This document shows, piece by piece, positions 5,860-64,000 of a stretch of DNA of 64,000 nt. The notes beneath the pieces were generated by a model, which worked only from the letters and a program-made list of their open reading frames with translations, was not told the DNA's origin and ran no database searches. The position numbers and the translations under genes were made by a program. How positions within the stretch are numbered: the stretch's first letter is position 1; each line of letters opens with the position of its first letter. Location of the stretch: the IMG/VR virus record IMGVR_UViG_3300028394_002328, positions 124,001 through 188,000 of that record. One strand, 5' to 3'.

Positions 5860-5860
5860 C

Positions 5861-26981: not shown

Positions 26982-26987
26982 TATTTA
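26982..26987 (-). promoter_or_regulatory. Possible late promoter core for phoH
   Basis: TAAATA on the minus strand 46 nt upstream of the TTG start. Confidence 0.4.
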
Positions 26988-27091
26988 AAGATTGTTCAGG
27001 TATGATATAACGTACTAGGTAAACACAGAGATAATTGATAAATATTAGGCTCAACATATTTTTTTGATTCTACATAAATATATTCCTCTAA

Positions 27092-27104
27092 GATAAATAC
27101 TAGA
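27092..27104 (+). promoter_or_regulatory. Late promoter, extended GATAAATACTAGA copy 3 (last A is the A of ATG)
   Basis: Further TAAATA cores at about 27039 and 27075 in the same intergenic region. Confidence 0.7.
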
Positions 27105-39276: not shown

Positions 39277-39279
39277 TAT

Positions 39280-40332: not shown

Positions 40333-40349
40333 TTAAAAAGGAGAAAAAA

Positions 40350-40718: not shown

Positions 40719-40725
40719 TATGTAA

Positions 40726-43434: not shown

Positions 43435-43444
43435 AGAGTAAAAA

Positions 43445-44050
43445 ATGGCACATTATGCTTTCTTAAATGAATATTTGATTGTTACAGAAGTTATCACTGG
43501 ATTAGATGAAAATAACTATGATTGGGAAACTCATTATGGTAATTTTCGTAGACAACTTTGTAAACGCACTAGTTACAATACATACGGTGGTGTACATAAT
43601 CTAGGTGGCACACCATATAGAAAAAACTATGCTGGTATTGGTTTTAGTTATGACCCACAGCGTGATGCGTTTATACCACCAAAACCAAATGATTATTGGT
43701 TGTTGAACGAAGAAACATGCTTATGGGAAGAACCCTCACCAACAAATTGTGAAGGTGTTTACTTTGCTAGGTTAGATGAAGATAATATTGTTCAACAATT
43801 ATTTTATGTTAAAAATTCTGATACTTCACTCGATGGTGTTATAAACGAAAACATAGGATTAGCATTCTGTAGAAGTGTTTTTGGTAGTGATACAAATTGG
43901 AAGCAAACTAGTCACGATCCACATTTTAGATTTCATTTTGGTGATATTGGCTATAGTTATGATGAAAACTATGATGCTTTTATACCACCTCAACCCGATC
44001 CAAATTGGGTATTAGACTATGATACATTCACTTGGTATTCACCTAGATAA
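43445..44050 (+). CDS. 'MAHYAF' protein 2, tandem two-domain version
   Basis: First half closely parallels 40350; second half (YFARLDEDNIV..WKQTS..GYSYDENYDAFIPPQP) is a second copy of the domain. Confidence 0.85.
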   Translation: MAHYAFLNEYLIVTEVITGLDENNYDWETHYGNFRRQLCKRTSYNTYGGVHNLGGTPYRKNYAGIGFSYDPQRDAFIPPKPNDYWLLNEETCLWEEPSPTNCEGVYFARLDEDNIVQQLFYVKNSDTSLDGVINENIGLAFCRSVFGSDTNWKQTSHDPHFRFHFGDIGYSYDENYDAFIPPQPDPNWVLDYDTFTWYSPR

Positions 44051-44055
44051 AGACA

Positions 44056-44061
44056 TAAATA
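44056..44061 (+). promoter_or_regulatory. Late promoter core, 4 nt before ATG
   Basis: CATAAATA-CAGT-ATG(44066), no SD. Confidence 0.65.
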
Positions 44062-44065
44062 CAGT

Positions 44066-46645: not shown

Positions 46646-46649
46646 ACAA

Positions 46650-46655
46650 TAAATA
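46650..46655 (+). promoter_or_regulatory. Late promoter core, 5 nt before ATG
   Basis: CAATAAATATAATCATG; near-identical copy at 48873. Confidence 0.7.
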
Positions 46656-46660
46656 TAATC

Positions 46661-48871: not shown

Positions 48872-48875
48872 TCAA

Positions 48876-48881
48876 TAAATA
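48876..48881 (+). promoter_or_regulatory. Late promoter core, 5 nt before ATG
   Basis: CAATAAATATAATTATG. Confidence 0.7.
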
Positions 48882-48886
48882 TAATT

Positions 48887-51031
48887 ATGTCATTACTTAG
48901 AATTGAACCAGCCGCGGTAAATGCCAATTCATCATTCTCTTTTGCAGGAGTAAATGCTACAGGCAATTTACAGTTACCTACTGGAAATACTGCTCAACGG
49001 CCAGGAAGTCCAATAGCCGGGACAATTAGATATAATTCACAAACAGGTTTCGCGGAAATATATACTAGCAGTGGATGGGCAACATTTGGTGCTCCTCCTC
49101 CAACTATCAGTACCGTATCACCTGGTACTTATAATGGAGAAACAGGTACTGAATTTACTGTAAATGGGGCTAATTTTACTAATGACGCTGTAGTTAAATT
49201 TGTTGATGTAAACAATACAGAATATAGCGCTACTGTAGTTACATTTGTAAATTCAAGTCAATTAATAGCCACTACACCTCAAGATTTTACCGTAGCACAA
49301 GGACCACTTGATGTTAAAGTAACACAATTAAGTGGAACAGTTACTAAACTAGCCTGTATAGATACTGGTGGTAGTCCCAGTTGGGTTACTACTGCTGGTC
49401 AAATAGGCGGTACAATTTATAGAAATGGCTCAGTTAGTGTAACTGTCTCAGCTACCGATCCTGATGCAAGTGCTACGATTACTTACAGTGTGCTTTCAGG
49501 TGCATTGCCAAGTGGATTAAGTTTGAATTCAAGTACAGGTGCTATTACTGGTACTGCACCTGATGTAGGTAGTGATACTACTTACAATTTTACATTGCGA
49601 GCAACTGACAATGCAGGTAATACATCTGACCGTGCGTTTAGTATGGTAATATTACAAGGTGCTCCAGGTGCACCTGTTATCGGTACAGCAACAAGATCAG
49701 CCAGCCAATCAGTTCAAGTTACATTTACCGCACCTGCAAATGTTGGCGGTAGTAGTATTACTAGTTACACTGCTACCAGTAGTCCAGGTAGTATTACAGG
49801 CACCGGTGCAAGCAGTCCAGTTACTGTAACTGGGTTGACAAATGGAACTGCATATACATTTACTGTTACTGCTACTAATAGTTATGGTACTGGTACTGCC
49901 AGTGGTGCTAGTAATTCTGCTACTCCATATGGTGTACCTGGTGCACCTACTATTGGTACTGCTACTTCTACTGGTACTACAACTGCTACTGTATCATTTA
50001 CCGCACCTGCAAGCAACGGCGGTAGTACAATAACCAGTTACACTGCGGTTAGTAGCCCTGGCAATGTCACTGGCACATTAAGTCAAGCAGGATCAGGTAC
50101 TATTACAGTAAGTGGATTAAGCGCAGGTACAAGTTACACATTTACAGTATATGCTACAAATGCCGCAGGTAATAGCGCTAATAGTTCAGCAAGTAATCAG
50201 ATAACAACAACTCAAGTAGCTCCAACTTCAGTTGAATACTTAGTATTAGCTGGTGGAGGTGGCGGCAGAGATTGTGGTACAGCAATTGGATCATCTGGTG
50301 GCGGTGGTGCTGGTGGATATTATAATTCAACTATAGCAGTATCGGGAAGTACTAGTTACACTGTAACAGTTGGTGGTGGAGGTACAAGAAATAATAATGG
50401 ATCAAACAGTGAATTTGCTAGCGTACTCGCATATGGTGGCGGTACTGGAGGAACAGGTACTCACGGTGCTGGCGAAAACGGAACTTCAGGTGGATCAGGT
50501 GGTGGCGGTGGTTGGGGTGATAATTCATACGGATATGGTGGATCCAGTCTAGGTGGCGGTAATGCAGGTGGAGTGGGCGGTACACGAAGTCAACCCGGTG
50601 GTGATCCGCCGTATGGTGCAGGTGGAGGAGGAGGCGCTGGTAGTGCTGGTGGTAACTACAGTGGTGGTGCAGGTGGATCAGGCGCTTCTAGTTCTATTAC
50701 AGGATCTTCGGTTACTTACGCAGGTGGCGGCGGCGGTGGTAATGAGTTAGGAACACCTGGTAGTGGTGGATCAGGAATAGGTGGTGCAGGTGGCACAAAT
50801 GGTGGTGGATACAATGCACCCACCGCTAACACAGGTGGCGGTGGAGGAGGAGCAGGTGGATATAATGGTGGCGCCGGAGGATCCGGTTCTTCTGGGGTAG
50901 TTATCATAGCATATCCAAATACATTTTTACCATTGTCATCAATATCTGGCGGACTCAGTTATGATCAACCCAGCAGAAGTGGTTATAGAGTATATCGCTT
51001 TACTGGCGGTACAGGTCCTATTAGCTGGTAA
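48887..51031 (+). CDS. Adhesin 6: anchor, IPT, He_PIG, 2x FN3, glycine-rich tip
   Basis: Tandem paralogue of 46661; ends GYRVYRFTGGTGPISW. Confidence 0.8.
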   Translation: MSLLRIEPAAVNANSSFSFAGVNATGNLQLPTGNTAQRPGSPIAGTIRYNSQTGFAEIYTSSGWATFGAPPPTISTVSPGTYNGETGTEFTVNGANFTNDAVVKFVDVNNTEYSATVVTFVNSSQLIATTPQDFTVAQGPLDVKVTQLSGTVTKLACIDTGGSPSWVTTAGQIGGTIYRNGSVSVTVSATDPDASATITYSVLSGALPSGLSLNSSTGAITGTAPDVGSDTTYNFTLRATDNAGNTSDRAFSMVILQGAPGAPVIGTATRSASQSVQVTFTAPANVGGSSITSYTATSSPGSITGTGASSPVTVTGLTNGTAYTFTVTATNSYGTGTASGASNSATPYGVPGAPTIGTATSTGTTTATVSFTAPASNGGSTITSYTAVSSPGNVTGTLSQAGSGTITVSGLSAGTSYTFTVYATNAAGNSANSSASNQITTTQVAPTSVEYLVLAGGGGGRDCGTAIGSSGGGGAGGYYNSTIAVSGSTSYTVTVGGGGTRNNNGSNSEFASVLAYGGGTGGTGTHGAGENGTSGGSGGGGGWGDNSYGYGGSSLGGGNAGGVGGTRSQPGGDPPYGAGGGGGAGSAGGNYSGGAGGSGASSSITGSSVTYAGGGGGGNELGTPGSGGSGIGGAGGTNGGGYNAPTANTGGGGGGAGGYNGGAGGSGSSGVVIIAYPNTFLPLSSISGGLSYDQPSRSGYRVYRFTGGTGPISW

Positions 51032-51040
51032 GGACTATTA

Positions 51041-52738
51041 ATGACAACGCAAATAACAACAGACAATATACAAACTAGTTCGGTTTATAGCCTCCAAGGA
51101 CCTAGAATCACTACTATTCAAATAACCAATAGTAGTTATGTTGTATTAGATGATACTGCTGTTAGCACCTCAGGTGGATATATTAAAATTACTGGTACTG
51201 GATTTACTAGTGGTAGTCAAGTATTAGTAAACAGTGTTGCAGCAACTAGTACTACTTTTGTTAGTGCTGTAGAATTAAGGGCACAACTACCGGCTACAGC
51301 CGCTGGTACTTATATATTATATGTAGCGGATACAAATGGTGGATTGGCTAGTAAAGTAAATGGTATTACATTTAGTGGTACTCCTACTTGGGTTACAGGT
51401 AGTACATTAACTAGTGGTATTTCTGCTGTTGCTTACAGTACACAACTTTCGGCTACTAGTGATAGTGCTATAACATACGCATTACAAGCAGGTAGTACAT
51501 TACCTACAGGATTGTCATTATCTAGCAGTGGATTACTTAGTGGTACTGTGACTATTGGATCGGATACTACATATAGTTTTACTATTACTGCTACCGACGT
51601 TGAATTACAAGATAGTCCTAGAACATTTAGTTTAACAATTATTGCGGCTACGGTGCCTGGAGCACCTACAATAGGTAGTGCTACAGCAACTGGTAGTAGT
51701 ACTGCTACAGTTACATTCACCGCACCAGTGTCAAATGGAGGTAGTACAATTACTTCTTACACCGCAGTTAGCAGTCCTGGTAGTATTACTGGTACACTAA
51801 GTCAGGCTGGTTCAGGTACTATTACTGTAAGTGGTTTAACACCGAGTACAAGTTACACCTTTACTGTATATGCTACAAATTCTATAGGCAATAGTGCAAA
51901 TAGCGCAGCGAGTAATAGTATTACTACTGCTCAGGTAGCACCAACTTCAGTTGAATATCTAGTTGTTGCCGGTGGCGGTGCGGGCGGAGCGGGTGCTAGT
52001 GGAGGTGGTGGAGCGGGCGGATTATCTTATAATTCATCGTTTGCAGTTAGCGCATCAACTGGATATACAATTACAATCGGTGGTGGTGGAGCTAGTGTAT
52101 CATATCCATCACTTAGTAATCCTGGTTCTAGCTCAGTATTTGCTAGTGTAACCTCACTGGGCGGCGGTTATGGTGGAGCTGGGCTTTCAGACACAACAAG
52201 AAATGGTGGAAGCGGAGGATCGGGTGGCGGTGGAGGTGCACCAGATGGATCCGGAGGTGCAGGCACCGCCGGACAAGGCAATAATGGTGGAGCAAATCAT
52301 CCAGGTGGATCATATGCAGGTGGTGGTGGCGGCGGCGCTGGCGGTGCTGGTGCAAACGGTACACAAGATACTGGAGGACCAGGCGGCGTAGGATTGTCAT
52401 ATAGTATAATAGGCGCGGCAACTTATTATGCAGGCGGTGGTGGCGGTGCCGGCAATTCCAACAGCGGTGCAGGCGGCAGTGGCGGAGGCGGAGCGGGCGG
52501 AGGCGGAGATCCTAGTAGTGGTATTGCAGGAACTCCCAACACTGGTGGTGGTGGCGGAGGTTCAAGAGGAGGAGGACCAGTTAGTGGGCCAGGCGGCTCC
52601 GGAGTAGTCATTATAGCCTATCCAAATACATATTTACCATTATCATCAATTAGTGGTGGACTCTCTTACGACCAACCTACAAGATCAGGTTACAGAGTAT
52701 ATCGCTTTACTGGTGGTACAGGTACTATCTCTTGGTAA
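51041..52738 (+). CDS. Adhesin 7: IPT, He_PIG, FN3, glycine-rich tip
   Basis: GGYIKITGTGFTSGSQVLV (IPT), LPTGLSLSSSGLLSGT (He_PIG), FN3, Gly-rich; ends GYRVYRFTGGTGTISW. Confidence 0.8.
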   Translation: MTTQITTDNIQTSSVYSLQGPRITTIQITNSSYVVLDDTAVSTSGGYIKITGTGFTSGSQVLVNSVAATSTTFVSAVELRAQLPATAAGTYILYVADTNGGLASKVNGITFSGTPTWVTGSTLTSGISAVAYSTQLSATSDSAITYALQAGSTLPTGLSLSSSGLLSGTVTIGSDTTYSFTITATDVELQDSPRTFSLTIIAATVPGAPTIGSATATGSSTATVTFTAPVSNGGSTITSYTAVSSPGSITGTLSQAGSGTITVSGLTPSTSYTFTVYATNSIGNSANSAASNSITTAQVAPTSVEYLVVAGGGAGGAGASGGGGAGGLSYNSSFAVSASTGYTITIGGGGASVSYPSLSNPGSSSVFASVTSLGGGYGGAGLSDTTRNGGSGGSGGGGGAPDGSGGAGTAGQGNNGGANHPGGSYAGGGGGGAGGAGANGTQDTGGPGGVGLSYSIIGAATYYAGGGGGAGNSNSGAGGSGGGGAGGGGDPSSGIAGTPNTGGGGGGSRGGGPVSGPGGSGVVIIAYPNTYLPLSSISGGLSYDQPTRSGYRVYRFTGGTGTISW

Positions 52739-52764: not shown

Positions 52765-55700
52765 ATGGCAACCTTTGTATTCCCAACATCTCCTACAGTA
52801 GGACAAACCTATACTTTTAGTACTAAAACTTGGGTTTGGACAGGATATGCTTGGGTATTACAAGCGAACGGTGCAATCAATAACTTACCAATTGGCAATG
52901 CTACTCCTAGCACTGGCGTATTTACTACATTACAAGCAACTACTAGTGCTAATTTAGGCACTGTATCTAATGTTTATATAGCTGGTGGCACTAGTGGTTA
53001 CATATTAAAGACAGATGGATCAGGTAATTTAACTTGGACTGATCCTACTGGCTATAGCGGCTATTCAGGTATTAGTGGATACTCAGGTGGTACTGGTAGT
53101 AACGGATCTAGTGGATATTCAGGCACCTCAGGAATTAGTGGATATACTGGCGTAAGTGGTTACACCGGTACTTCGGGTATCAGTGGTTATACAGGTGCAA
53201 GTGGTATATCTGGATATACCGGTATATCAGGTGCTAGTGGTTATACAGGTACATCAGGTATTAGTGGATATACTGGCGTAAGTGGATACTCAGGCAGCAG
53301 TGGGTATTACGGTCAGGATGGCGCTAGTGGATATTCAGGCATGTCTGGATACACTGGTGCTTCGGGTATAAGCGGTTACACAGGTGCAAGTGGTACATCA
53401 GGCTATACTGGCGTGAGTGGATATTCAGGTACATCGGGGTACACGGGTACTTCAGGAATATCTGGATATACTGGTATATCAGGTGCCAGTGGTTATACAG
53501 GTACATCAGGTATTAGTGGATATTCAGGTGTCACAGGTAGCAATGGTACTAGCGGATATTCAGGTGTTAGTGGATACTCAGGCAGCAGTGGCTATTACGG
53601 ACAAGATGGCGCTAGTGGTTATTCAGGTATTAGTGGTTATAGTGGAATAGGCATTAGTGGATACAGTGGCGCAGCAGGCCCATCAAATACTATACTTGCT
53701 ACAAATGATACAAGCACTACTACATTATATCCTGTACTAGTTGGTGCAGCAGGTAGCAATCAAACAGCAAAAGTAAATACAGGTAACTTTGTTTTTAATG
53801 CTAGTACAAATACTTTTAGCACAGGTAATATTAATGTAAGTGGAGTCAGTAATTTAGGTCCTGTAGGTAATGTCATTATTACTGGTGGTTCTAATAACGC
53901 TATATTGTCTACTAATGGTAGTGGTAATCTATCTTGGTCTACATTAAGTTCAGTATTAGGAAATTTTAATACTATTAATTATACAGGTAATGGTGTTCAA
54001 ACAACCTTTACTGTAACTTCAGGCGATACTGCTAATGGCATATTCGTCACTCAAAACGGTTTACTTCAAGTTCCGATAACTGATTATACAGTATCAGGCT
54101 CAAATTTGGTATTTACCAGCGCCCCTGCTAATGGAGTGGCTATTAGTATTCGTGAACTTGCTGGATTAAGTGGATATTCAGGTGGCACCGGTGGTAGCGG
54201 ATCTAGTGGTTATTCGGGTATCAGTGGATATTCAGGGTCGGGTATAAGTGGTTATTCAGGTTCGGGTATTAGCGGATACTCAGGCTTAGGTATCAGTGGG
54301 TATTCAGGAGAATCAGGGTATTCAGGAGTGAGTGGATATACAGGGACTTCAGGTTATACTGGTGTAAGTGGATACTCAGGTACATCGGGCGTAAGTGGAT
54401 ACTCAGGTACATCGGGCGTAAGTGGGTATACAGGTATATCAGGTGTTAGTGGTTATTCAGGTACATCAGGCGTAAGTGGTTATTCAGGTGGTACTGGTAG
54501 CGATGGTATTAGTGGTTATTCAGGTGTAAGTGGATATTCAGGATCAGGAATCAGTGGATATTCAGGGTTAGGTATAAGTGGATACTCAGGTGCAGCAGGT
54601 ATAAGCGGTTATACAGGTGTAAGTGGTTATAGTGGACAAGGTGGCACACTAACTTCAACAGTAGATAATTTTACAGGTGATGGATCTCAAACTGCATTCA
54701 CACTGTCTACTACACCTACAAATATAAATTATACAATAGTATCTGTAGGTGGTGTATTACAACCACAAACAACATACTCAGTTACAGGATCTACATTAAC
54801 ATTTAGTTCGGCTCCAGTAAACACAGTAGTAATACAGGTTACAACTTTTGGGGGAAATGTATTTGCACCAGGTGCTGTATCAGGTTACAGCGGTTATTCA
54901 GGGTTAGGTATCAGTGGATATACTGGTGCTAGCGGATATACCGGAGTAAGTGGATACACAGGTGTCAGCGGGTATACTGGAACAAGTGGATACTCAGGTG
55001 CATCAGGTGTAAGTGGCTATTCAGGTGGAACTGGTAGTGATGGTGCTAGTGGTTATTCAGGTCTTTCGGGGTACACCGGTACTTCGGGTATCAGTGGGTA
55101 TACTGGTGTCAGTGGGTATTCAGGTCTTTCGGGCTACACCGGTACTTCGGGTGTCAGTGGGTATACTGGTGTCAGTGGTTACACAGGTACATCAGGTGTT
55201 AGTGGATATTCAGGCGAAAGTGGCTATTCAGGTGTCAGTGGATATACAGGCATAAGTGGATATACAGGCATAAGTGGATATACAGGCATAAGTGGATATT
55301 CAGGTACATCAGGTGTAAGTGGATATACAGGTATTAGTGGTTATTCAGGTACCTCGGGCGTAAGTGGGTATACAGGTACATCAGGCATAAGTGGATATTC
55401 AGGTACATCAGGTGTTAGTGGATATTCAGGCGAAAGTGGTTATACCGGCGTTAGTGGATACTCAGGTACATCAGGTGTTAGTGGATACTCAGGTACATCA
55501 GGTGTTAGTGGATACTCAGGTACATCAGGTATCAGTGGTTACACAGGAACAAGTGGATACTCAGGTACATCGGGCGTAAGTGGTTATACTGGAACAAGTG
55601 GTACATCAGGTGTAAGTGGTTATACTGGAGTAAGTGGATATTCAGGTACATCAGGTATAAGTGGCTATACTGGAGTAAGTGGTTATACAGGTGCATCAGG

Positions 55701-57792
55701 TGTAAGTGGATATTCAGGATCAGGTGTAAGTGGATATTCAGGATCAGGAATCAGTGGATATTCAGGTCTTTCAGGCTTTAGTGGTAGCCCGGGTATTTCA
55801 AGTAGTTACTTCAACTATCTCGCTGATGCTAATACTCAGAGTGCGCCACCTGGACTTGGTGATATTATTTGGAATAATAGTACACAAATAAATTCTACTC
55901 AACTGTTCATAAATCATATAACCACAGATAGCATTGATATTGACATATTCTTAGCATTACTAAGCCAAACAGAAAATATTACTATACAAGATACCTCACT
56001 GAGTGACAATTATCAGATATTTGAAATTAATGGTACTCCTACAAATAATACTGGATATTGGACTGTCCCAGTAGTGGCAGTGGGTTCAGGCGGAACAGGC
56101 ACTACTAATTTTGCTAATAACTTACCCGTAATCTTAGCAATAACTAACGGTGTAAGTGGATTCTCAGGTTATTCAGGTGTAAGTGGATATAGTGGAATAG
56201 GTGGTACATTAACTTCAACTGTAGATAATTTTACTGGCAATGGATCTCAAACAGCATTCACACTAAGTGTGACACCTACAAGTATTAATTATACACTAGC
56301 AGCAGTAGGCGGTGTGTTACAACCTGTTACAGCATACACTGTAGTAGGTACAACTTTGACATTTAGTTCTGCACCAAGTAATGGAGAAATAATACAAGTC
56401 ACAACTCTAGGTGGATATGCTTATGCGCCGGGCGCTATATCAGGATATAGTGGTTATTCAGGTACATTGGGTGTAAGTGGCTATTCAGGTGTTTCAGGAT
56501 ATACTGGAACTAGCGGATATACAGGCATCAGTGGCTATACTGGAGTAAGTGGATATTCAGGTTCAGGTATCAGTGGATATACTGGAGTAAGTGGTTACAC
56601 AGGTGTCAGTGGATATTCAGGATCAGGCATCAGTGGGTATTCAGGTACTTCAGGCTATACTGGAGTAAGTGGTTACACAGGTGTTAGTGGTTACACAGGT
56701 GTCAGTGGTTACTCAGGAGTAAGTGGATATTCAGGAGTAAGTGGATATTCAGGTACATCAGGTGTTAGTGGGTATTCAGGCATAAGTGGTTATACTGGTG
56801 TCAGTGGATACACCGGTGTCAGTGGTTACACAGGTACTTCAGGATACACCGGTGTCAGTGGTTACACAGGTACTTCAGGATATACCGGAACAAGTGGATA
56901 TTCAGGTACATCAGGTGTAAGTGGCTATACTGGAGTAAGTGGATATTCAGGTATCAGTGGCTACTCAGGGTCAGGTATAAGTGGTTATTCAGGTCTAGGT
57001 TACGGAGGGCTAACATCTGGAACAAGTCTAACAATTGTAAGTAGTGGGACAGTCACATTCACTACAAATTTATCAGATACACAAACCGCATTTAGAACCG
57101 GTCAACGAGTAAGAGCATTCTTCACTACAGCAAACACCAACTATATGGAAGGCACTATTAATTCATTTAGTGGTACTACACTACAATTAAGTGTGACTAA
57201 TTCTTCTACTGCGGGGATTGGCCCTCTTAGTTCTTGGGCTTTTGTAGCTGCTGGCGTACAAGGTGACAGTGGAACTAGCGGGTACACGGGTATCAGCGGT
57301 TATACGGGTACTTCAGGATACACTGGCACTAGTGGTTATTCAGGTGCTACAGGTCCTGTCGGAGGATCTAATACACAAGTTTTATATAATAATGGTGGTG
57401 TAGCGGCTGGATCTGCTAATTTAACATGGAGCGGTACAACACTATCAATAACTGATGGCGCTTCAAATATGTATGCTGTTGGTTATAAAGCAGTACCACA
57501 AAGTGCTACTACATCAGGTAATTTTGCCTTAACAGATAGCGCTAAACATGTTTATGTATCTGCCGGGGTAACAGTGCCTCCTAATAGTACCGCAGCATTT
57601 GATATAGGTACTGTATTGACCGTTGTAAATTCTAGTGCTTCTTCAATAACTGTTACACAAGGTGTAGGAGTAACTATGAGACAAACCGGTACAGCAAGTA
57701 CTGGTAATAGAACTCTTGCTAGTTATGGCTTATGCAGTATTATTAAAGTTGCTACTGATACTTGGTATATTTCAGGAACTGGGTTGACTTAA
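52765..57792 (+). CDS. Second giant Gly-X-Ser fibre protein (1675 aa) with interspersed globular modules
   Basis: FP.SPTVGQTYT..KTW.W.G..W N-terminus; six Gly-X-Ser blocks; three FTG.G.QT.F modules; YFNYLAD module shared with 9516; C-terminal GTASTGNRTLASYGL..IIKVATDTW..SG.GL domain. Confidence 0.85.
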   Translation: MATFVFPTSPTVGQTYTFSTKTWVWTGYAWVLQANGAINNLPIGNATPSTGVFTTLQATTSANLGTVSNVYIAGGTSGYILKTDGSGNLTWTDPTGYSGYSGISGYSGGTGSNGSSGYSGTSGISGYTGVSGYTGTSGISGYTGASGISGYTGISGASGYTGTSGISGYTGVSGYSGSSGYYGQDGASGYSGMSGYTGASGISGYTGASGTSGYTGVSGYSGTSGYTGTSGISGYTGISGASGYTGTSGISGYSGVTGSNGTSGYSGVSGYSGSSGYYGQDGASGYSGISGYSGIGISGYSGAAGPSNTILATNDTSTTTLYPVLVGAAGSNQTAKVNTGNFVFNASTNTFSTGNINVSGVSNLGPVGNVIITGGSNNAILSTNGSGNLSWSTLSSVLGNFNTINYTGNGVQTTFTVTSGDTANGIFVTQNGLLQVPITDYTVSGSNLVFTSAPANGVAISIRELAGLSGYSGGTGGSGSSGYSGISGYSGSGISGYSGSGISGYSGLGISGYSGESGYSGVSGYTGTSGYTGVSGYSGTSGVSGYSGTSGVSGYTGISGVSGYSGTSGVSGYSGGTGSDGISGYSGVSGYSGSGISGYSGLGISGYSGAAGISGYTGVSGYSGQGGTLTSTVDNFTGDGSQTAFTLSTTPTNINYTIVSVGGVLQPQTTYSVTGSTLTFSSAPVNTVVIQVTTFGGNVFAPGAVSGYSGYSGLGISGYTGASGYTGVSGYTGVSGYTGTSGYSGASGVSGYSGGTGSDGASGYSGLSGYTGTSGISGYTGVSGYSGLSGYTGTSGVSGYTGVSGYTGTSGVSGYSGESGYSGVSGYTGISGYTGISGYTGISGYSGTSGVSGYTGISGYSGTSGVSGYTGTSGISGYSGTSGVSGYSGESGYTGVSGYSGTSGVSGYSGTSGVSGYSGTSGISGYTGTSGYSGTSGVSGYTGTSGTSGVSGYTGVSGYSGTSGISGYTGVSGYTGASGVSGYSGSGVSGYSGSGISGYSGLSGFSGSPGISSSYFNYLADANTQSAPPGLGDIIWNNSTQINSTQLFINHITTDSIDIDIFLALLSQTENITIQDTSLSDNYQIFEINGTPTNNTGYWTVPVVAVGSGGTGTTNFANNLPVILAITNGVSGFSGYSGVSGYSGIGGTLTSTVDNFTGNGSQTAFTLSVTPTSINYTLAAVGGVLQPVTAYTVVGTTLTFSSAPSNGEIIQVTTLGGYAYAPGAISGYSGYSGTLGVSGYSGVSGYTGTSGYTGISGYTGVSGYSGSGISGYTGVSGYTGVSGYSGSGISGYSGTSGYTGVSGYTGVSGYTGVSGYSGVSGYSGVSGYSGTSGVSGYSGISGYTGVSGYTGVSGYTGTSGYTGVSGYTGTSGYTGTSGYSGTSGVSGYTGVSGYSGISGYSGSGISGYSGLGYGGLTSGTSLTIVSSGTVTFTTNLSDTQTAFRTGQRVRAFFTTANTNYMEGTINSFSGTTLQLSVTNSSTAGIGPLSSWAFVAAGVQGDSGTSGYTGISGYTGTSGYTGTSGYSGATGPVGGSNTQVLYNNGGVAAGSANLTWSGTTLSITDGASNMYAVGYKAVPQSATTSGNFALTDSAKHVYVSAGVTVPPNSTAAFDIGTVLTVVNSSASSITVTQGVGVTMRQTGTASTGNRTLASYGLCSIIKVATDTWYISGTGLT
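53050..57360 (+). repeat. Interrupted 9-bp-period Gly-X-(Ser/Thr) coding repeats
   Basis: Blocks at about 53050-53685, 54163-54645, 54883-55800, 56152-56205, 56440-57006, 57259-57360. Confidence 0.9.
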
Positions 57793-59580: not shown

Positions 59581-59588
59581 TATAAATA
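59581..59588 (+). promoter_or_regulatory. Canonical T4 late promoter TATAAATA
   Basis: Exact consensus in the gap before the holin-like gene. Confidence 0.8.
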
Positions 59589-59611: not shown

Positions 59612-60262
59612 ATGTCACAAACAATACTACCAAAGAAAACTGATTTTGAACAGCCAACAGTAACTGATGATTCCCATCATGAATTATTAGCTAACGATCC
59701 AGCAGTTACAGCGATCCCAAAAGGGACAACATATGACAGCTTTAACTCAACAACCAACATACCTGCAAGTGGGCCTACAGCATTTGGCACACCACCAGCA
59801 GGTGAATTCGGGGCATTCGGTGGTTTTGATTCATCAGCAACAACAGGTTTTGGGGCAAATCCAGGGTTCGGGGCGTCAACAAGTTCATTTGGTGGAACAA
59901 CCAACAGCATGGGATCCACCGGCACAAACAATATGAATACGGGCAATCAACCTATACTTACAGGATCAGGTCCGAATGCTGCACAAGGTTCAGATATATT
60001 AGTTACCAATAACAACACAGATTGGATAAATAAAAAATGGCGTCCGGCAATGGGCTGGATATATATGTTAACATGTACTATGGACTTTGTTGTGTTCCCC
60101 ATATTATGGAGTTTATTACAATCCTTGAGTCATGGTAGTGTAACTAGCCAATGGCAACCATTAACACTTCAAGGTGCAGGTCTTTACCATATTGCAATGG
60201 GTGCAGTATTGGGTATAGCGGCATACGGCAGAACAAAAGAAAAAGTTGCCGGGATGTCTTAA
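59612..60262 (+). CDS. 3TM holin-like protein (GTA holin type) with long low-complexity N-terminus
   Basis: DWINKKWRPAMGW.Y...C..DF..FP.LW, W.PLTLQG.GL.H.AMGA.LG..A.GRT.EK. Confidence 0.75.
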   Translation: MSQTILPKKTDFEQPTVTDDSHHELLANDPAVTAIPKGTTYDSFNSTTNIPASGPTAFGTPPAGEFGAFGGFDSSATTGFGANPGFGASTSSFGGTTNSMGSTGTNNMNTGNQPILTGSGPNAAQGSDILVTNNNTDWINKKWRPAMGWIYMLTCTMDFVVFPILWSLLQSLSHGSVTSQWQPLTLQGAGLYHIAMGAVLGIAAYGRTKEKVAGMS

Positions 60263-60282
60263 TTTTTTAAAGGAAATATTAA

Positions 60283-61227
60283 ATGAAAAAAATAATAGAA
60301 ATACTAACAGCAACACTGTTAAGTATTACTTCATCAGTTGTACTTGCTCAAAGTCAAACTCCAGTAAATATCACAACAACTTCTCCACAAGGTAGTCCTG
60401 TTCAGTTTACTAGTTACAGTGGGTTGAATGCTACCTTTACATTTCAAACACAAAACACATTAAATTCTGCATTTTGTAATAGTGGAGCAGGTGATGTATG
60501 TACTCTAGCCACATCACCCAGTGGTGTAAATGCATATCCTATTGCCAATACACGTTGGGGAACATATAAACTTAATAACCCCAATGCAGGTAGTTGTTCC
60601 CCTAGCATTACATTTGGTGGTTCTCAATACTGTTTATTAGAATTTCACTTTCATGGACCATCAGAGCACTGGATAAACAATTCTGTTACTGACCTAGAAG
60701 TACACTTTGTTTATTTTAAACTAGCTGATGTTACAGGTCCTTATGGATTATGTAATGCAGATAGTTTGTTAGTATTAGGTCAACGCATGGTTGGTAACGG
60801 TAGTACACCAAATGCAGCTTGGACCAATGTGTTTAATGCGATTCCAGCTGCTAACAGCACAGGTGCATTATCAGGTCAGACTGTTAGTTTTAACATTGCA
60901 ACAATGATGGGCATGGCCAACTTCAACACAGCACCAAGTTATAGATACAGCGGTGGATTGACTGCACCAATTTCTATTGGCACGTTGGGTGCCGCTAGTA
61001 CCTGTGTTGCAACTACCGATCCTGCTAACAGTCGTCCATGGTGGGGTAATCCACAGCGTCAACTAACACAAGAATCATATCCTCAAATTGTTTCTTGGGT
61101 ATTGTTTAGACAACCAATACAATTGTCTGTGGCACAAGTACAACAATTTAAAACTGTTTTTGCAGATGGCAATGCCCGTGCTGTACAACCAGTAGGTGCT
61201 ACTATTTATTTTGCTAATCCAAACTAA
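60283..61227 (+). CDS. cah: Secreted alpha-class carbonic anhydrase
   Basis: Signal peptide MKKII..VVLA; QTPVNI; EFHFHGPSEH; LEVHFV; YRYSGGLTAP; VSWVLFRQPIQLS..Q; NARAVQP. All three Zn-ligand His residues are present. Confidence 0.9.
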   Translation: MKKIIEILTATLLSITSSVVLAQSQTPVNITTTSPQGSPVQFTSYSGLNATFTFQTQNTLNSAFCNSGAGDVCTLATSPSGVNAYPIANTRWGTYKLNNPNAGSCSPSITFGGSQYCLLEFHFHGPSEHWINNSVTDLEVHFVYFKLADVTGPYGLCNADSLLVLGQRMVGNGSTPNAAWTNVFNAIPAANSTGALSGQTVSFNIATMMGMANFNTAPSYRYSGGLTAPISIGTLGAASTCVATTDPANSRPWWGNPQRQLTQESYPQIVSWVLFRQPIQLSVAQVQQFKTVFADGNARAVQPVGATIYFANPN

Positions 61228-61256
61228 TTGACGGCATACAATTTGTATGCTATATT
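61228..61256 (+). promoter_or_regulatory. Sigma70-type promoter with fully palindromic 17-bp spacer
   Basis: TTGACG-[GCATACAA T TTGTATGC]-TATATT, extended TG; ATG 6 nt downstream. Confidence 0.75.
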
Positions 61257-61262: not shown

Positions 61263-62066
61263 ATGACAGATCACTATCAGACTTTGGGGGTAGCTAAAAA
61301 TGCTACCCCTGATGAAATTAAAAAAGCATACCGTAAACTCGCTAGTCAAAATCACCCAGATAAAGGCGGTGATACTGCTACCTTTCAACGAATTGAAGAG
61401 GCATACCGTACACTAAGTGATTCGGAAAAGAGGCAACAATACGACAATCCCATGCCTCAAGGGTTTCCTGGTGGATTCCCCGGTGGATTTCATTTTCAGC
61501 AAGGACCTGACATTAATGACATATTTGGTCAAATGTTTGGTATGCGTCAAGGTAATCCATTTCAACAACCTGGCCATCAAGTATTCAGAACTCAGGTAAT
61601 GCTTACCCTAGAAGAAATGTATACAGGAACACAAAGAGTTCTTAATCTACAATTGCCTACTGGGCTTAAAGCAGTCAATGTTGATGTACCTAAAGGAGTT
61701 GAATCAGGTAGTCAAATTAAATATGAAAACATTGTAAAGAATGGAGTATTAGTTATAGAATTCCATGCCATGCAACATCTTAGATTTGAGCGTAAAAATG
61801 CCGATTTGTATTGTAATCAAAGCATAAGTGTGTTAGACTTGATTGTAGGTACAAGTTTTCATTTCAACACTATTAGTGGAAAAACATTAGAAGTTCAAGT
61901 ACATCCCAAAACACAACCGTGGATGCAACTAAAAATACCAAGACAAGGTATGCCCATACCAAACTCGCATTTATACGGAGACCAAATTATATTGCTTAAA
62001 CCCTTCATTCCTGATACTATGCCCGATGAAATCTCTGAAACTATTTTGCGACACAGAACTGTGTAA
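61263..62066 (+). CDS. dnaJ: DnaJ-class co-chaperone (J domain, G/F region, C-terminal domain, no Zn finger)
   Basis: DHYQTLGV..A..DEIKKAYRKLA..HPDKGG..F..I.EAY..LSD..KR..YD; GFPGGFPGGF. Confidence 0.95.
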   Translation: MTDHYQTLGVAKNATPDEIKKAYRKLASQNHPDKGGDTATFQRIEEAYRTLSDSEKRQQYDNPMPQGFPGGFPGGFHFQQGPDINDIFGQMFGMRQGNPFQQPGHQVFRTQVMLTLEEMYTGTQRVLNLQLPTGLKAVNVDVPKGVESGSQIKYENIVKNGVLVIEFHAMQHLRFERKNADLYCNQSISVLDLIVGTSFHFNTISGKTLEVQVHPKTQPWMQLKIPRQGMPIPNSHLYGDQIILLKPFIPDTMPDEISETILRHRTV

Positions 62067-62069
62067 ATA
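62064..62069 (+). promoter_or_regulatory. Late promoter core overlapping the dnaJ stop
   Basis: TAAATA on the TAA stop, then SD AAGGA before the GTG at 62087. Confidence 0.5.
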
Positions 62070-62086
62070 TTTAAAAGGAAACTAAT

Positions 62087-64000
62087 GTGAGTAATTCACC
62101 CGAAATTGAAACTATCATTGAAAGGGCTATTGCCTTTGCTAAAGAAAAAAATCATCAATATTGCACAGTAGAACATCTGTTATTGTCTCTTATTAACTTT
62201 CCACCATTCAAAAAGTGTTTAGTTAATTTTGGTGCAGATATTGATACAATGAACGATGAAGTGAATGCATATCTTAACGGAATGCATGCCATTGAATCTA
62301 AAAATAATGAAACTACTCCAAGAAAAACCAATAGTTTAGAGCGTGTTATTAACCGTAGCGTAACACAAGTATTGTTTACAGGTCGTCGCCAAGTAACAAC
62401 TATTGACCTTTATCTTAGTATTGCTAGCGAGGGTAATAGCCATGCTCATTATTTCTTGTTGAAATATGGTATTAATAAGGCTGAGTTCGTTCAACACTGG
62501 CAGAAAACATATAAGGGTCAAGAATATACAGGTAATTTGTCTGACCAACAAGCAGATGAAATCTTAGAAGAATATACTATCAATCTTACTACACTAGCCA
62601 AAGAAAATAAACTAGAACCTGTTATTGGTCGTAGCAAAGAACTTGATGATATTATCAATGTATTGGCTAAACGGTTTAAGTCAAATGTACTAATGGTAGG
62701 TGACCCAGGTGTAGGTAAAACTGCTATTGTTGAAGGTCTAGCACAGGCTATCAACAATGGAGATATCCCCCAGTTTCTCAATGGTTATCAATTGTATTCA
62801 CTTGAGATTGGTAGTCTACTTGCTGGTAGTAAATATCGCGGTGACTTTGAAGAAAAAGTCAAACATGTTATTGACGCACTTAACACCAAAAAGAAAGCAA
62901 TTCTCTTTATTGATGAAGCACATACTATGCAGGGTGCGGGTGGTGCTAGCAATGGTAGTGTAGACTTTGCTAATATGATTAAGCCAGCAATTACTAAAGG
63001 TACACTTAAGGTTATTGCTAGTACTACTTGGGAAGAGTTTTACGAAAGTTTTGAAAAAGATCGGGCGCTAATGCGTAGGTTCTATCGTATTGGTATTGAT
63101 GAGCCAAGTCAGGATAGTACTGTTCGTATCTTGTCAGGATTAAGCACTAGGTTGAATGATTTCCATCAAGTAGAAATCACTGATGAAGCAATCAAAGCCG
63201 CAGTAGAAAGTTCAGGCCGTTATATTCATGACCGTAAAAATCCTGATAAGTCTATTGATTTGCTTGATGCAGCCTGTGCTAAACAGCGTGTATTGGGTAA
63301 TGAAGGTGCGGTAATTACTAAAGAACTTATCTTTGAACAAGTAGAAAAATATACTGGAGTACCTGCTGATAAACTAAAAGGTGATAATTTCAGTAAGATT
63401 CAGAACTTGGAAATTAATATCAAAGGTAAACTCTACGGTCAAAATGAAACCGTTGAAAAAGTCCTTGAGCGAGTATATGTTAGTTTTGCAGGTATTGGTA
63501 ATGATACTAAGCCTACAGCAAGTTTCTTGTTCTTAGGCCCAACTGGTACAGGTAAAACTGAACTTGCGAAATTGTTAGGTAAGAACCTTGATATGCCTTT
63601 ACTTAAGTATGACATGACCGAATATGGAGAAAAACATAGCGTTAGCAGTTTGATTGGACCTCCCCCAGGTTATGTTGGGTTTGGTGATAGTCAAGTATCA
63701 GGTGGTCGTTTGATTAACGATTTGAGTAAGAACCCACATAGTATTCTATTGTTTGATGAGGTAGAAAAAGCTCACCCAGATATTTTTAATATCTTTTTAC
63801 AAATGCTAGACGAAGGACGTATTACCGGTAGTAATGGTAAAGAAGTAAGTTGTAAGAATACTATTATTATCATGACCAGTAACTTGGGATCGAGTGATAG
63901 TGAACGCAATAACATTGGCTTTGGTGATCAAGAAAAAACAGGTGAAGATGACCGAGCGTTGAAAGAATTCTTCAAGCCTGAGTTTAGAAATCGTTTGGAT
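62087..64000 (+). CDS. clpA: ClpA-type Hsp100 AAA+ ATPase, 3'-truncated (not in ORF track)
   Basis: Manually translated from GTG: HQYCTVEHLLL, PVIGR, GDPGVGKT, KYRGDFEE, LFIDEAH, PDKSIDLLD, FLGPTGTGKTELAK, LIGPPPGYVG, LFDEVEKAHPD, KPEFRNRLD. No ClpB-type long middle domain between the two AAA modules. Confidence 0.95.
   Translation, partial: MSNSPEIETIIERAIAFAKEKNHQYCTVEHLLLSLINFPPFKKCLVNFGADIDTMNDEVNAYLNGMHAIESKNNETTPRKTNSLERVINRSVTQVLFTGRRQVTTIDLYLSIASEGNSHAHYFLLKYGINKAEFVQHWQKTYKGQEYTGNLSDQQADEILEEYTINLTTLAKENKLEPVIGRSKELDDIINVLAKRFKSNVLMVGDPGVGKTAIVEGLAQAINNGDIPQFLNGYQLYSLEIGSLLAGSKYRGDFEEKVKHVIDALNTKKKAILFIDEAHTMQGAGGASNGSVDFANMIKPAITKGTLKVIASTTWEEFYESFEKDRALMRRFYRIGIDEPSQDSTVRILSGLSTRLNDFHQVEITDEAIKAAVESSGRYIHDRKNPDKSIDLLDAACAKQRVLGNEGAVITKELIFEQVEKYTGVPADKLKGDNFSKIQNLEINIKGKLYGQNETVEKVLERVYVSFAGIGNDTKPTASFLFLGPTGTGKTELAKLLGKNLDMPLLKYDMTEYGEKHSVSSLIGPPPGYVGFGDSQVSGGRLINDLSKNPHSILLFDEVEKAHPDIFNIFLQMLDEGRITGSNGKEVSCKNTIIIMTSNLGSSDSERNNIGFGDQEKTGEDDRALKEFFKPEFRNRLD

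What the first reader, a model, noticed from the sequence alone, without database searches (positions are those of the whole stretch)
60283..61227. Phage-encoded, exported alpha-carbonic anhydrase with remodelled active-site surroundings, in a late operon with the holin
Seen: Zn ligands H-x-H (60646, 60652) and H (60703), the SEH glutamate and the L-T of the GSLTTP motif (GGLTAP) are intact, with a Sec-type signal peptide. Atypical: the usual N-terminal W.Y..W..C segment is missing, no NGHT proton-shuttle His is evident, a ~35-aa insertion replaces TPPC, and six Cys could form new disulfides. No terminator or promoter separates it from the holin gene downstream of TATAAATA. Established: alpha-CAs hydrate CO2 in the periplasm; vaccinia D8 is an inactive CA fold used for attachment. 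I do not recall alpha-CA as a described bacteriophage auxiliary gene. Inference: periplasmic pH/bicarbonate control late in infection (carbon supply, lysis timing) or a repurposed Zn hydrolase/adhesin.
Basis: partly seen in the sequence, partly recalled or inferred. Interest (0 to 1): 0.82.

Follow-up and report, generated by a model that had tools for sequence, protein, structure and literature searches.

The report
Exported alpha-carbonic anhydrase of freshwater jumbo phages
A large uncultured freshwater phage carries an intact, secreted, zinc-type (alpha) carbonic anhydrase next to its holin gene; the gene family is conserved in many related lake phages, often inside their lysis gene cluster, and I found no description of it in the papers I could search.

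Summary
ORF 60283..61227 (+) encodes a 314-aa alpha-carbonic anhydrase (Pfam PF00194, 62.5 bits; AlphaFold pLDDT 90.9; best structural matches are solved alpha-CAs). The three zinc histidines, Glu106/Thr199, Glu117 and the CO2 pocket are kept in all 33 phage homologues examined (median dN/dS 0.13).

I add a 30-aa insert at the His64 loop and three co-occurring Cys pairs. Most oddities are shared with a cellular sister subfamily (Acidobacteria-like, at most 34% identical).

The gene is viral. The window matches IMG/VR contigs of 88 and 335 kb, and the phage sequences form one clade.

In relatives the gene lies beside the holin in five gene orders, often between endolysin, holin and a spanin-like gene. 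In T4-like relatives it lies among structural genes. A late-promoter-like motif precedes the holin, none precedes the CA.

Most likely it is an active periplasmic CA made late. Its purpose is inferred: periplasmic pH/PMF control tied to lysis, or inorganic-carbon supply. No activity, export or timing was measured. No alpha-CA occurs in PHROGs or in annotated GenBank phages.

The parts
59581..59588 (+). TATAAATA(C), a late-promoter-like motif 24 nt before the holin start codon
   Evidence: One search shows only 2 copies on the + strand in 64 kb. In one search the core ATAAATA lies within 45 nt upstream of a start codon in 11 of its 16 + strand occurrences (binomial P about 1e-14). Its function as a promoter is inferred.
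59612..60262 (+). Holin (216 aa): a 130-aa low-complexity N-terminal extension plus a conserved C-terminal membrane domain
   Evidence: Pfam GTA_holin_3TM E = 1.5e-5, above its cut-off. PHROG 3427 holin E = 5e-7. The C-terminal 82-84 aa are 65-73% identical to the holins next to the CA gene in relatives.
60270..60274 (+). Shine-Dalgarno-like AAGGA, 8 nt before the CA start codon
   Evidence: Read directly from the sequence. The same aaggaaa is seen before the CA gene of relatives.
60283..61227 (+). Alpha-carbonic anhydrase gene (314 aa including the signal peptide)
60283..60348 (+). Predicted Sec signal peptide, residues 1-22, cleavage after VLA
   Evidence: Read by rule: basic n-region, hydrophobic core, small residues at -3 and -1. 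The pattern is conserved in all homologues. Modelled as a separate helix 2-16 with low pLDDT. No predictor was run.
60469..60558 (+). Insert of about 30 aa (residues 63-92) at the position of the proton-shuttle His64 loop, with C65 and C73
   Evidence: In the alignment the canonical NNG|HTIQ is interrupted and the His column holds G93. pLDDT is 63-69 and falls below 50 at residues 77-84. The Cys pair co-occurs across the family.
60646..60705 (+). Zinc-binding core: H122, H124 (His94/96), E128 (Glu106), E139 (Glu117), H141 (His119), V143 (Val121)
   Evidence: The three His are invariant in 118 of 118 sequences. E128 and E139 are present in 116 of 118.
60952..60969 (+). GGLTAP, the Leu198-Thr199 gatekeeper motif with Thr200 replaced by Ala
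   Evidence: The profile alignment to solved alpha-CAs places YRYSGGLTAP on Y-x-GSLTTP. L is present in 117 of 118 and T in 117 of 118 sequences.
60970..61089 (+). 40-residue segment (230-269) replacing the canonical P-C-x-E-G, with C241
   Evidence: It is modelled with pLDDT above 90. A shorter version (about 22 aa) exists in the cellular sister subfamily.
61228..61256 (+). Sigma-70-like TTGACG-17-TATATT overlapping an 8-bp hairpin (61233..61251) between the CA and DnaJ genes
   Evidence: The total number of such matches is no higher than in shuffles, so this is weak. The hairpin lacks a good T-run.
61263..62066 (+). DnaJ-type co-chaperone (267 aa)
   Evidence: Pfam DnaJ plus DnaJ_C. It is syntenic with the CA gene in relatives.
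62090..64000 (+). ClpA/ClpB-family AAA+ chaperone, which runs off the window
   Evidence: Open frame. The relatives' gene carries Clp_N/AAA/AAA_2/ClpB_D2-small. The nearest Atlas clusters are ClpA-like.
17388..18008 (+). Endolysin homologue (GH19-like, phrog_181), here 42 kb away from the holin-CA pair
   Evidence: 53% identical to the endolysin that is adjacent to the CA gene in L092. PHROG endolysin E = 7e-75.

Best explanation
The gene encodes a zinc-dependent alpha-class carbonic anhydrase. It is exported by the Sec pathway into the periplasm of a Gram-negative host, where three disulfides stabilise it. There it speeds the interconversion CO2 + H2O <-> HCO3- + H+.

It is made late in infection. 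It shares the holin's late-type promoter, and in relatives it has its own late-type motif or is tightly coupled to the preceding late gene.

The fold, the catalytic residues, purifying selection, viral origin and gene context are shown. Export, activity and timing are inferred.

My preferred purpose is inference only, at about 0.35. The enzyme changes how fast the periplasm and the membrane pH gradient respond to CO2 and bicarbonate at the end of infection. It would do this in one of two ways. It could hydrate outgoing respiratory CO2 and so acidify the periplasm, sustaining the proton-motive force until the holin fires. Or it could speed a bicarbonate/CO2 proton shuttle that helps collapse the pH gradient. 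Either way it would tune lysis timing in bicarbonate-buffered lake water.

Lacking His64, it is probably a slower, buffer-dependent CA, as CA III and CA V are.
For: Family and fold:
- Pfam PF00194, 62.5 bits.
- AlphaFold pLDDT 90.9, pTM 0.89.
- Foldseek against PDB: the top 50 matches are all alpha-CAs, E down to 1.4e-15, target TM up to 0.76.

Catalytic set:
- His94/96/119, Glu106, Glu117, Leu198, Thr199, Val121/143/207, Trp209, Tyr194 and Arg246 are identical in all 33 phage homologues; Asn244 is kept in 32 of 33 (Asp in one).
- Pairwise dN/dS has a median of 0.13.

Export:
- The signal-peptide pattern is conserved in every homologue.
- Cys residues appear only as pairs (65/73, 105/117, 157/241) across 118 sequences, with one exception.
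- All known bacterial alpha-CAs carry signal peptides (PMC5746736).

Viral origin:
- Identical copies lie on IMG/VR contigs of 335 kb and 88 kb; relatives lie on contigs of up to 347 kb.
- Phage genes flank the gene on both sides.
- The phage sequences form one clade with SH-aLRT 100.
- The best cellular identity is 32-34%.
- The ESM Atlas cluster is labelled 100% Viruses, commonest Uroviricota.

Late and lysis context:
- The CA gene is within one gene of the holin in 11 of the 18 contexts tabulated (some near-duplicates), in five gene orders. These include endolysin-CA-DUF4337-holin, holin-endolysin-p288-CA-spanin-like, and CA-holin.
- The ATAAATA motif is enriched before late genes, present before the holin and absent before the CA gene. 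It is present before the CA gene in L001, L094, L095 and L097.

Expression:
- A lake metatranscriptome holds mismatch-free contigs on the holin, on the CA gene and on the CA-DnaJ junction, but none on the 1.8 kb upstream.

Bicarbonate is reported to perturb the bacterial PMF and pH gradient (PMC11901407).
Against: No enzyme activity, zinc binding, export or timing was measured.

The proton-shuttle His64 is missing and the mature protein has no spare histidine. Thr200 is Ala and Gln92 is Glu. Two large inserts flank the active-site mouth. I could not inspect the model's coordinates, so I do not know whether the cavity stays open.

The link to lysis genes is not universal. In T4-like relatives the gene sits after the major capsid protein (L003) or after the neck proteins (L104). 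Seven loci show no holin of this type within the flanks.

Much of the holin-CA synteny may simply reflect common descent of closely related jumbo phages.

A catalyst cannot shift the equilibrium pH, so any pH effect needs a net CO2 or HCO3- flux.

The RNA evidence is thin: depth 1-3, assembled contigs only, and DNA carry-over is not excluded.

The host is unknown.
Confidence: 0.45

Rival explanations
1. Inorganic-carbon auxiliary metabolic gene. The periplasmic CA converts lake bicarbonate to CO2, which diffuses into the cell (or traps leaking CO2). This feeds carboxylations needed for nucleotide and lipid synthesis, or carbon fixation if the host is an autotroph. On this view the position beside lysis genes is incidental, because cargo genes often sit at the end of late operons.
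For: The same biochemical evidence as for the best explanation applies. The accepted view of bacterial periplasmic alpha-CAs is supply of CO2 and bicarbonate for metabolism (PMC5746736). CA genes have been flagged as viral AMGs in metagenomic surveys. In T4-like relatives the gene is not next to lysis genes. Cellular relatives occur in Nitrosospira, Sphaerotilaceae and Acidobacteria.
Against: A late-type promoter context gives little time for a biosynthetic benefit. The gene keeps its place beside the holin through several rearrangements, even where the endolysin has moved 42 kb away. No bicarbonate transporter or carboxylase gene was seen nearby. The host and its carbon metabolism are unknown.
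Confidence: 0.3
2. Repurposed CA fold. The protein is a periplasmic zinc hydrolase or esterase acting on another substrate, for example an ester in the cell envelope that hinders the endolysin. Alternatively it is a binding module, as in poxvirus D8 or a holin regulator. In neither case would it be a CO2 hydratase.
For: His64 is lost, Thr200 is Ala, and inserts of about 30 and about 35 aa lie beside the active-site entrance. Alpha-CAs have side esterase activity (PMC5746736). The gene sits between endolysin, holin and spanin-like genes in relatives. The CA fold is used for attachment in poxviruses (for the fold match; the function is from my own knowledge).
Against: Every residue of the zinc site, the Thr199-Glu106 gate and the hydrophobic CO2 pocket is kept in all 33 phage sequences under purifying selection. 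To my knowledge, CA-fold binding proteins have lost zinc ligands. The same oddities occur in free-living bacteria, where no lysis role applies.
Confidence: 0.12
3. Artefact: a host gene on a chimeric contig, or a recent accidental pick-up with no function in the phage.
For: Canonical alpha-CAs in some IMG/VR 'viral' contigs from isolate genomes look like host flanks. So do those in unannotated GenBank 'Listeria/Enterococcus phage' fragments.
Against: The same gene in the same context was assembled independently in many samples. Phage structural and lysis genes lie on both sides. No cellular genome among 185,579 species representatives has a homologue above 34% identity. The phage sequences form a deep clade reaching down to 44% identity, under purifying selection.
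Confidence: 0.01

Closest known systems
Bacterial periplasmic alpha-carbonic anhydrases (Neisseria gonorrhoeae 1KOP, Sulfurihydrogenibium 4G7A/4X5S, Thermovibrio 4C3T, Helicobacter 4YGF)
   Same: Same fold (Foldseek E about 1e-15). Same zinc triad, same Glu106-Thr199 gate and Glu117, same CO2 pocket. Same N-terminal signal peptide and the short 'HFH-x-PSEH' loop typical of bacterial enzymes.
   Different: Only 17-20% identical over the structural alignment. The phage protein lacks the about 25-aa N-terminal segment, His64 and the canonical Cys pair. It has Thr200->Ala and Gln92->Glu, two inserts (about 30 and about 35 aa) and three other Cys pairs. It is encoded by a phage.
Uncharacterised cellular alpha-CA subfamily (Acidobacteriaceae MAG L007, Bryobacteraceae, Verrucomicrobia, Rhizobacter/Roseateles; metagenomic P0066-P0094)
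   Same: Sister group in the tree (clade support 100). It shares the truncated N-terminus starting at QSPINI, the absence of His64, GSLTAP, the C157/C241 pair, a Cys-containing loop at the His64 position and an insert after LTAP.
   Different: At most 34% identical by tblastn. Its inserts are shorter (about 11-20 and about 22 aa). It lacks the C105/C117 pair. It sits in a cellular rather than a viral context.
Virus-encoded carbonic anhydrases reported in metagenomic surveys
   Same: A CA gene on a phage contig, proposed as an auxiliary gene for CO2/bicarbonate or pH control.
   Different: The one study that classified them found phage CAs to be exclusively beta-class. None was reported as exported, linked to lysis genes, or forming a conserved lineage in jumbo phages.
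Poxvirus D8/OPG105 and giant-virus CA-like proteins
   Same: A viral protein with the alpha-CA fold (Foldseek against BFVD, E about 1e-10, TM about 0.5).
   Different: These are eukaryotic viruses and share 11-15% identity. From my own knowledge, D8 is a non-catalytic attachment protein. The phage protein keeps the complete catalytic set.
Accessory periplasmic proteins of phage lysis cassettes (for example T4 RI antiholin)
   Same: A small secreted protein encoded next to the holin. This is a resemblance in position only, recalled from my own knowledge.
   Different: No sequence or fold relation. The phage protein is an enzyme fold with an intact active site. No interaction with the holin has been tested.

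Membership tests
Alpha-carbonic anhydrase (Pfam PF00194) | Sequence match above the curated family threshold | tested here: met
   62.5 bits against a cut-off of 27, E = 6.3e-17. A profile of the family against PDB alpha-CAs gives E = 7.6e-29.
Alpha-carbonic anhydrase (Pfam PF00194) | Alpha-CA fold (central twisted beta-sheet) | tested here: met
   AlphaFold pLDDT 90.9. The 50 best Foldseek matches in PDB are all alpha-CAs, with target TM 0.65-0.76.
Alpha-carbonic anhydrase (Pfam PF00194) | Three histidine zinc ligands (His94, His96, His119) | tested here: met
   H122, H124 and H141 are invariant in 118 of 118 aligned sequences.
Alpha-carbonic anhydrase (Pfam PF00194) | Thr199-Glu106 gatekeeper pair and second-shell Glu117 | tested here: met
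   T227, E128 and E139 are present in 33 of 33 phage sequences. The placement of GGLTAP on GSLTTP comes from the profile alignment.
Alpha-carbonic anhydrase (Pfam PF00194) | Hydrophobic CO2 pocket (Val121, Val143, Leu198, Val207, Trp209) | tested here: met
   V143, V164, L226, V270 and W272 are present in 33 of 33 phage sequences.
Alpha-carbonic anhydrase (Pfam PF00194) | Proton-shuttle His64 (typical of fast isoforms but not universal: to my knowledge it is absent in CA III and CA V) | tested here: not met
   The canonical His column holds Gly in all 33 phage sequences and a 30-aa insert precedes it. The mature protein has only the four canonical His (His94, His96, His107, His119).
Alpha-carbonic anhydrase (Pfam PF00194) | Zinc binding and CO2 hydratase activity | not testable with these tools
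   Needs purified protein.
Bacterial-type periplasmic alpha-CA | N-terminal signal peptide | tested here: met
   By rule-based reading only: MKK, a hydrophobic core, then V-L-A|Q, with the same pattern in all homologues. The feature is as stated in PMC5746736. No predictor was run.
Bacterial-type periplasmic alpha-CA | Canonical disulfide between the N-terminal Cys and the Cys after LTTPP | tested here: not met
   Both positions are absent. Three other co-occurring Cys pairs replace them.
Phage auxiliary metabolic gene | A metabolic enzyme with cellular homologues, inside a bona fide phage genome with phage genes on both sides | tested here: met
   Tail sheath, tail tube, holin and endolysin lie in the window. 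The gene sits on contigs of 335-347 kb in IMG/VR. Cellular homologues are 24-34% identical.
Phage lysis cassette component | Conserved position among holin, endolysin and spanin genes | tested here: inconclusive
   Beside the holin in 11 of the 18 contexts tabulated, in five gene orders. Among structural genes in L003 and L104.
Phage lysis cassette component | An effect on lysis when removed or added | not testable with these tools
   No cultured phage-host pair is available.
Poxvirus D8-like non-catalytic CA-fold protein | Loss of catalytic and zinc residues, with use as a binding module | tested here: not met
   All catalytic residues are retained. There is only fold-level similarity.

The most novel reading that the evidence does not exclude
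The carbonic anhydrase is a working part of the lysis programme of these jumbo phages. It would couple the periplasmic CO2/bicarbonate/proton balance, and through it the proton-motive force that holds the holin in check, to host respiration or to lake-water alkalinity. It would thereby set when the holin fires. That would be a new kind of lysis regulator.
Probability: 0.2. Interest if true: 0.85.

Novelty: new variant of a known kind. Interest (0 to 1): 0.58.

Why it matters
Carbonic anhydrases are among the best-understood enzymes. I found no characterised phage alpha-CA, and I found none at all in cultured phage collections.

Here a whole lineage of abundant lake phages, with genomes up to about 345 kb, has kept an exported, apparently active one under purifying selection. 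The gene repeatedly sits next to the genes that burst the cell.

If it acts in lysis, it links lysis timing to inorganic-carbon chemistry and membrane energetics. If it acts in carbon supply, it is a viral handle on CO2/bicarbonate exchange in freshwater bacteria.

It also gives enzymologists a natural alpha-CA subfamily that lacks His64, with new disulfides and loops around the active site. The protein is small and can be tested directly.

Tried and rejected
- GenBank phages: blastn of the holin-CA-DnaJ region and tblastn of the CA gave no match. The phage has no cultured relative in that set.
- PHROGs: no family matched the window CA, and none matched canonical or sister-group alpha-CAs.
- tblastn with a canonical alpha-CA found only 7 unannotated 'Listeria/Enterococcus phage' fragment records, with the gene near record ends. 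I did not treat these as bona fide phage genes.
- IMG/VR contigs from isolate genomes (L105-L111) carry a canonical alpha-CA among PTS, GH1 and RpiR genes beside an integrase. I judged these to be host flank.
- TATAAATA as a general late promoter: only 4 copies against about 12 expected. The shorter core ATAAATA(C/T) is the enriched element.
- The intrinsic terminator and sigma-70 promoter scans give counts no higher than shuffles. I use them only as weak hints.
- Host prediction: a porin of a relative and the ClpA-like protein point loosely to Pseudomonadota or other Gram-negatives, nothing firmer. There are no tRNAs in the window.
- The 'moraphage' paper on freshwater jumbo phages with DnaJ/DnaK does not contain the term 'carbonic anhydrase'. 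I could not tell whether it describes the same lineage.
- The QLTQES motif at residues 260-265 as an alternative Thr199 site was rejected. The profile alignment and invariance favour GGLTAP.
- I could not read the model's coordinates. Disulfide geometry and cavity access were therefore not checked.
Full report
**1. What is there**

The window is one long co-directional array of phage late genes. A tail sheath (382..3111) and a tail tube (3818..4777) match PHROG tail families, followed by many very large fibre-like proteins.

The array ends with a holin at 59612..60262 (Pfam GTA_holin_3TM, PHROG holin). The ORF in question follows at 60283..61227, then a DnaJ at 61263..62066 and a ClpA/ClpB-type AAA+ chaperone that runs off the window.

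The ORF is real. It is 314 aa long and has an AAGGA ribosome-binding site 8 nt upstream. It matches Pfam PF00194 at 62.5 bits against a cut-off of 27. It matches solved bacterial alpha-CAs directly at E about 1e-10, and as a family profile at E = 7.6e-29.

**2. Fold and active site**

An AlphaFold model built on a 118-sequence alignment has mean pLDDT 90.9 and pTM 0.89. Its 50 best Foldseek matches in PDB are all alpha-CAs, including those of Neisseria, Photobacterium, Thiomicrospira and Sulfurihydrogenibium and human CA IV, II and XIII. E-values reach 1.4e-15 and target TM-scores 0.65-0.76.

The correspondences below come from the profile alignment to solved structures and from a MAFFT alignment with canonical bacterial enzymes.

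| Window residue | hCA II equivalent |
|---|---|
| H122, H124, H141 | His94, His96, His119 |
| E128 | Glu106 |
| E139 | Glu117 |
| L226-T227 | Leu198-Thr199 |
| V143, V164, V270, W272 | Val121, Val143, Val207, Trp209 |
| Y222 | Tyr194 |
| N297, R299 | Asn244, Arg246 |

All of these residues are identical in the 33 phage homologues aligned, except that one sequence has Asp at the Asn244 position. The three histidines are invariant in all 118 sequences.

The departures are as follows:
- The mature chain starts right at QTPVNI (Gln28-Ile33), so the usual first 25 or so residues are missing.
- The His64 column holds Gly. It is preceded by an insert of about 30 aa (residues 63-92) that carries C65 and C73 and is poorly modelled.
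- Thr200 is replaced by Ala and Gln92 by Glu.
- Residues 230-269 replace the five-residue P-C-x-E-G, a net gain of about 35 aa. This segment is confidently modelled.
- The canonical Cys pair is gone.

Across the 118 sequences the six Cys occur as pairs. The patterns are: none 57, all six 31, only 157/241 19, 65/73 plus 157/241 10, and one exception. I read this as three disulfides, which fits an oxidising compartment.

The N-terminus follows the Sec pattern in every homologue. [quoted passage not shown]

**3. The gene belongs to phages and is old there**

Identical copies lie on IMG/VR contigs of 335 kb and 88 kb. Relatives at 62-86% identity lie on contigs of up to 347 kb. The word-index search found 61 clusters at 45-94% identity. 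The DNA is held by many freshwater metagenome runs.

Contexts read from four long contigs are unmistakably phage. They include a T4-type portal, prohead protease, Gp23 capsid protein, gp15-like protein, holin and endolysin. The most basal member (L104, 44% identity) sits after the head-tail adaptor and head-closure genes.

In a maximum-likelihood tree the 17 phage sequences form one clade (SH-aLRT 100). Its sister is a group containing an Acidobacteriaceae MAG and metagenomic proteins. All of these nest in a distinct alpha-CA subfamily that also holds sequences from Bryobacteraceae, Verrucomicrobia and Sphaerotilaceae.

No genome among 185,579 species representatives has a homologue above 34% identity. 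The exhaustive HMMER search shows the same gap. Pairwise dN/dS within the phage clade has a median of 0.13. The ESM Atlas cluster is labelled 100% viral. Contamination or a chimeric contig is excluded.

Most of the 'remodelled' features are shared with the cellular sister subfamily. These are the truncated N-terminus, the absence of His64, GSLTAP, the C157/C241 pair and shorter versions of both inserts. The phage lineage lengthened the inserts and added the C105/C117 pair.

**4. Context**

In the window and its closest relatives the gene order is holin-CA-DnaJ-ClpA. Other relatives show different orders:
- endolysin-CA-DUF4337-holin (L092);
- endolysin-CA-holin (L091);
- endolysin, spanin-like gene, a secreted Cys-rich protein, CA, holin (L088);
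- endolysin-DUF4337-holin-p288-CA (L005, L102);
- endolysin, spanin-like gene, p288, CA, holin (L101);
- holin-endolysin-p288-CA-spanin-like gene (L001).

The CA gene is thus within one gene of the holin in 11 of the 18 contexts tabulated (some are near-duplicates of one another), in five arrangements. In the window the endolysin homologue has moved to 17388..18008, yet holin and CA remain adjacent.

Against a strict lysis role, L003 has capsid protein-p245-CA-fibre-like protein, and L104 has neck proteins-CA-large p288-domain protein. What stays constant is a late-gene context.

A motif resembling the T4 late-promoter core, ATAAATA(C/T), lies within 45 nt upstream of a start codon in 11 of its 16 + strand occurrences (binomial P about 1e-14). 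One copy precedes the holin (59582). None precedes the CA gene, which is only 20 nt downstream of the holin. In L001, L094, L095 and L097 the CA gene has its own copy.

Between the CA and DnaJ genes there is a weak hairpin and a sigma-70-like TTGACG-17-TATATT. This hints that the chaperone pair is a separate unit.

A lake metatranscriptome holds mismatch-free contigs on the holin, on the CA gene and on the CA-DnaJ junction, but none on the 1.8 kb upstream or on the rest of DnaJ. This is suggestive of transcription but thin. Depth is low and DNA carry-over is not excluded.

**5. How it most likely works**

The shown facts are an intact alpha-CA catalytic core under selection, features of export and disulfide bonding, viral ownership and a late or lysis gene context.

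From these I infer that the enzyme is exported to the periplasm of a Gram-negative host. Supporting hints are the spanin-like genes in relatives and the porin and OmpA genes in one relative. There it would catalyse CO2/bicarbonate interconversion late in infection, probably with a lower, buffer-dependent turnover because His64 is missing.

I rate an active exported CA at about 0.75. For its purpose I give three options:
- About 0.35: periplasmic pH and proton-motive-force control tied to lysis. Bicarbonate is reported to perturb the bacterial PMF (PMC11901407). From my own knowledge, holins fire when the PMF falls.
- About 0.3: inorganic-carbon supply, the accepted role of periplasmic alpha-CAs.
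- The remainder: another or an unknown role, including a changed substrate.

**6. Comparison and novelty**

The protein passes every structural and catalytic membership test for alpha-CA except His64 and the canonical disulfide, neither of which is universal in the family.

Viral CAs have been mentioned in metagenomic surveys. The one study that classified them found phage CAs to be exclusively beta-class. PHROGs has no alpha-CA family. In BFVD the matches at E <= 0.001 are poxvirus and giant-virus proteins plus two entries without names, and no named phage protein is among them. The jumbo-phage reviews and comparative papers that the search listed do not contain the term.

I therefore rate this as a new variant of a known kind: a known enzyme family, but a divergent subfamily in a new carrier and a new genomic setting. 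It is abundant in public data and already auto-annotated as 'carbonic anhydrase' by JGI. The novelty lies in recognising and explaining it, not in the sequence being unseen.

Noticed in passing
window + strand: 6354, 9485, 20527, 23195, 27074, 27093, 34517, 44055, 46649, 48875, 52740, 59582: An ATAAATA(C/T) motif, like the T4 late-promoter core, sits just upstream of many structural-gene start codons. 11 of its 16 + strand occurrences lie within 45 nt of a start (P about 1e-14). The full TATAAATA is depleted in the window (4 copies against about 12 expected).
   Followed up: partly
window 37450..52738 and 52765..57792: Consecutive large ORFs end with nearly the same C-terminal peptide (..YRFTGGTGTISW). 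This suggests a family of paralogous fibre-like proteins. The next ORF is a 1675-aa protein made largely of SGY/collagen-like triplet repeats. GC content rises to 42-48% over this stretch.
   Followed up: no
window 59612..60262; L005 8613..9164; L088 8958..9548; L092 9503..10066: The holin carries a low-complexity G/S/T/F-rich extension of about 130 aa. It is at the N-terminus in the window and L006, but an extension of the same kind (about 100 aa) is at the C-terminus in L005, L088 and L092.
   Followed up: no
window 17388..18008: A GH19-like endolysin homologue (phrog_181, E = 7e-75) lies inside the structural module, right after the 2620-aa ORF and 42 kb from the holin. In relatives the same gene is adjacent to the holin and the CA gene.
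   Followed up: partly
window 61263..64000: A phage-encoded DnaJ plus a ClpA/ClpB-type AAA+ chaperone pair is syntenic in all close relatives. It may have its own sigma-70-like promoter at 61228..61256.
   Followed up: partly
L001 9112..9978; L003 9233..9970; L005 9195..9980; L099, L100, L101, L102; L104 5180..8419 (N-terminal part): A 245-288-aa protein with no Pfam family (here called p288) precedes the CA gene in many relatives. Its domain opens the 1079-aa ORF after the CA gene in the basal relative. It is absent from the window. One member has a weak PHROG hit to a tail protein.
   Followed up: partly
L001/L002 145..696 and 5598..6761 (- strand): A 171-kb relative encodes an OmpA-family protein and a Pseudomonadota-type porin (Porin_4). 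This is a hint of a Gram-negative host.
   Followed up: partly
P0064, P0065, P0067, P0069, P0072 (metagenomic proteins): Proteins of 490-1841 aa are made of 2-6 tandem canonical alpha-CA domains. Their origin is unknown.
   Followed up: partly
L105-L111 (IMG/VR contigs from isolate genomes); GenBank OR846719, OR846721, OR846607 and others: A canonical alpha-CA appears in 'viral' contigs among PTS, GH1 and RpiR genes beside an integrase. It also appears near the ends of unannotated 'Listeria/Enterococcus phage' fragment records. These are probably host flanks rather than phage genes.
   Followed up: partly
window 25871..27103, including the - strand ORF 26157..26978: This is the only sizeable minus-strand ORF (273 aa). 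It lies in a 1.2-kb break of the otherwise co-directional gene array and was not examined.
   Followed up: no
L088 7388..7999: A secreted, Cys-rich 203-aa protein with no family match sits directly upstream of the CA gene in one group of relatives. L091 carries a copy downstream of its CA and holin genes, at the end of the locus.
   Followed up: no
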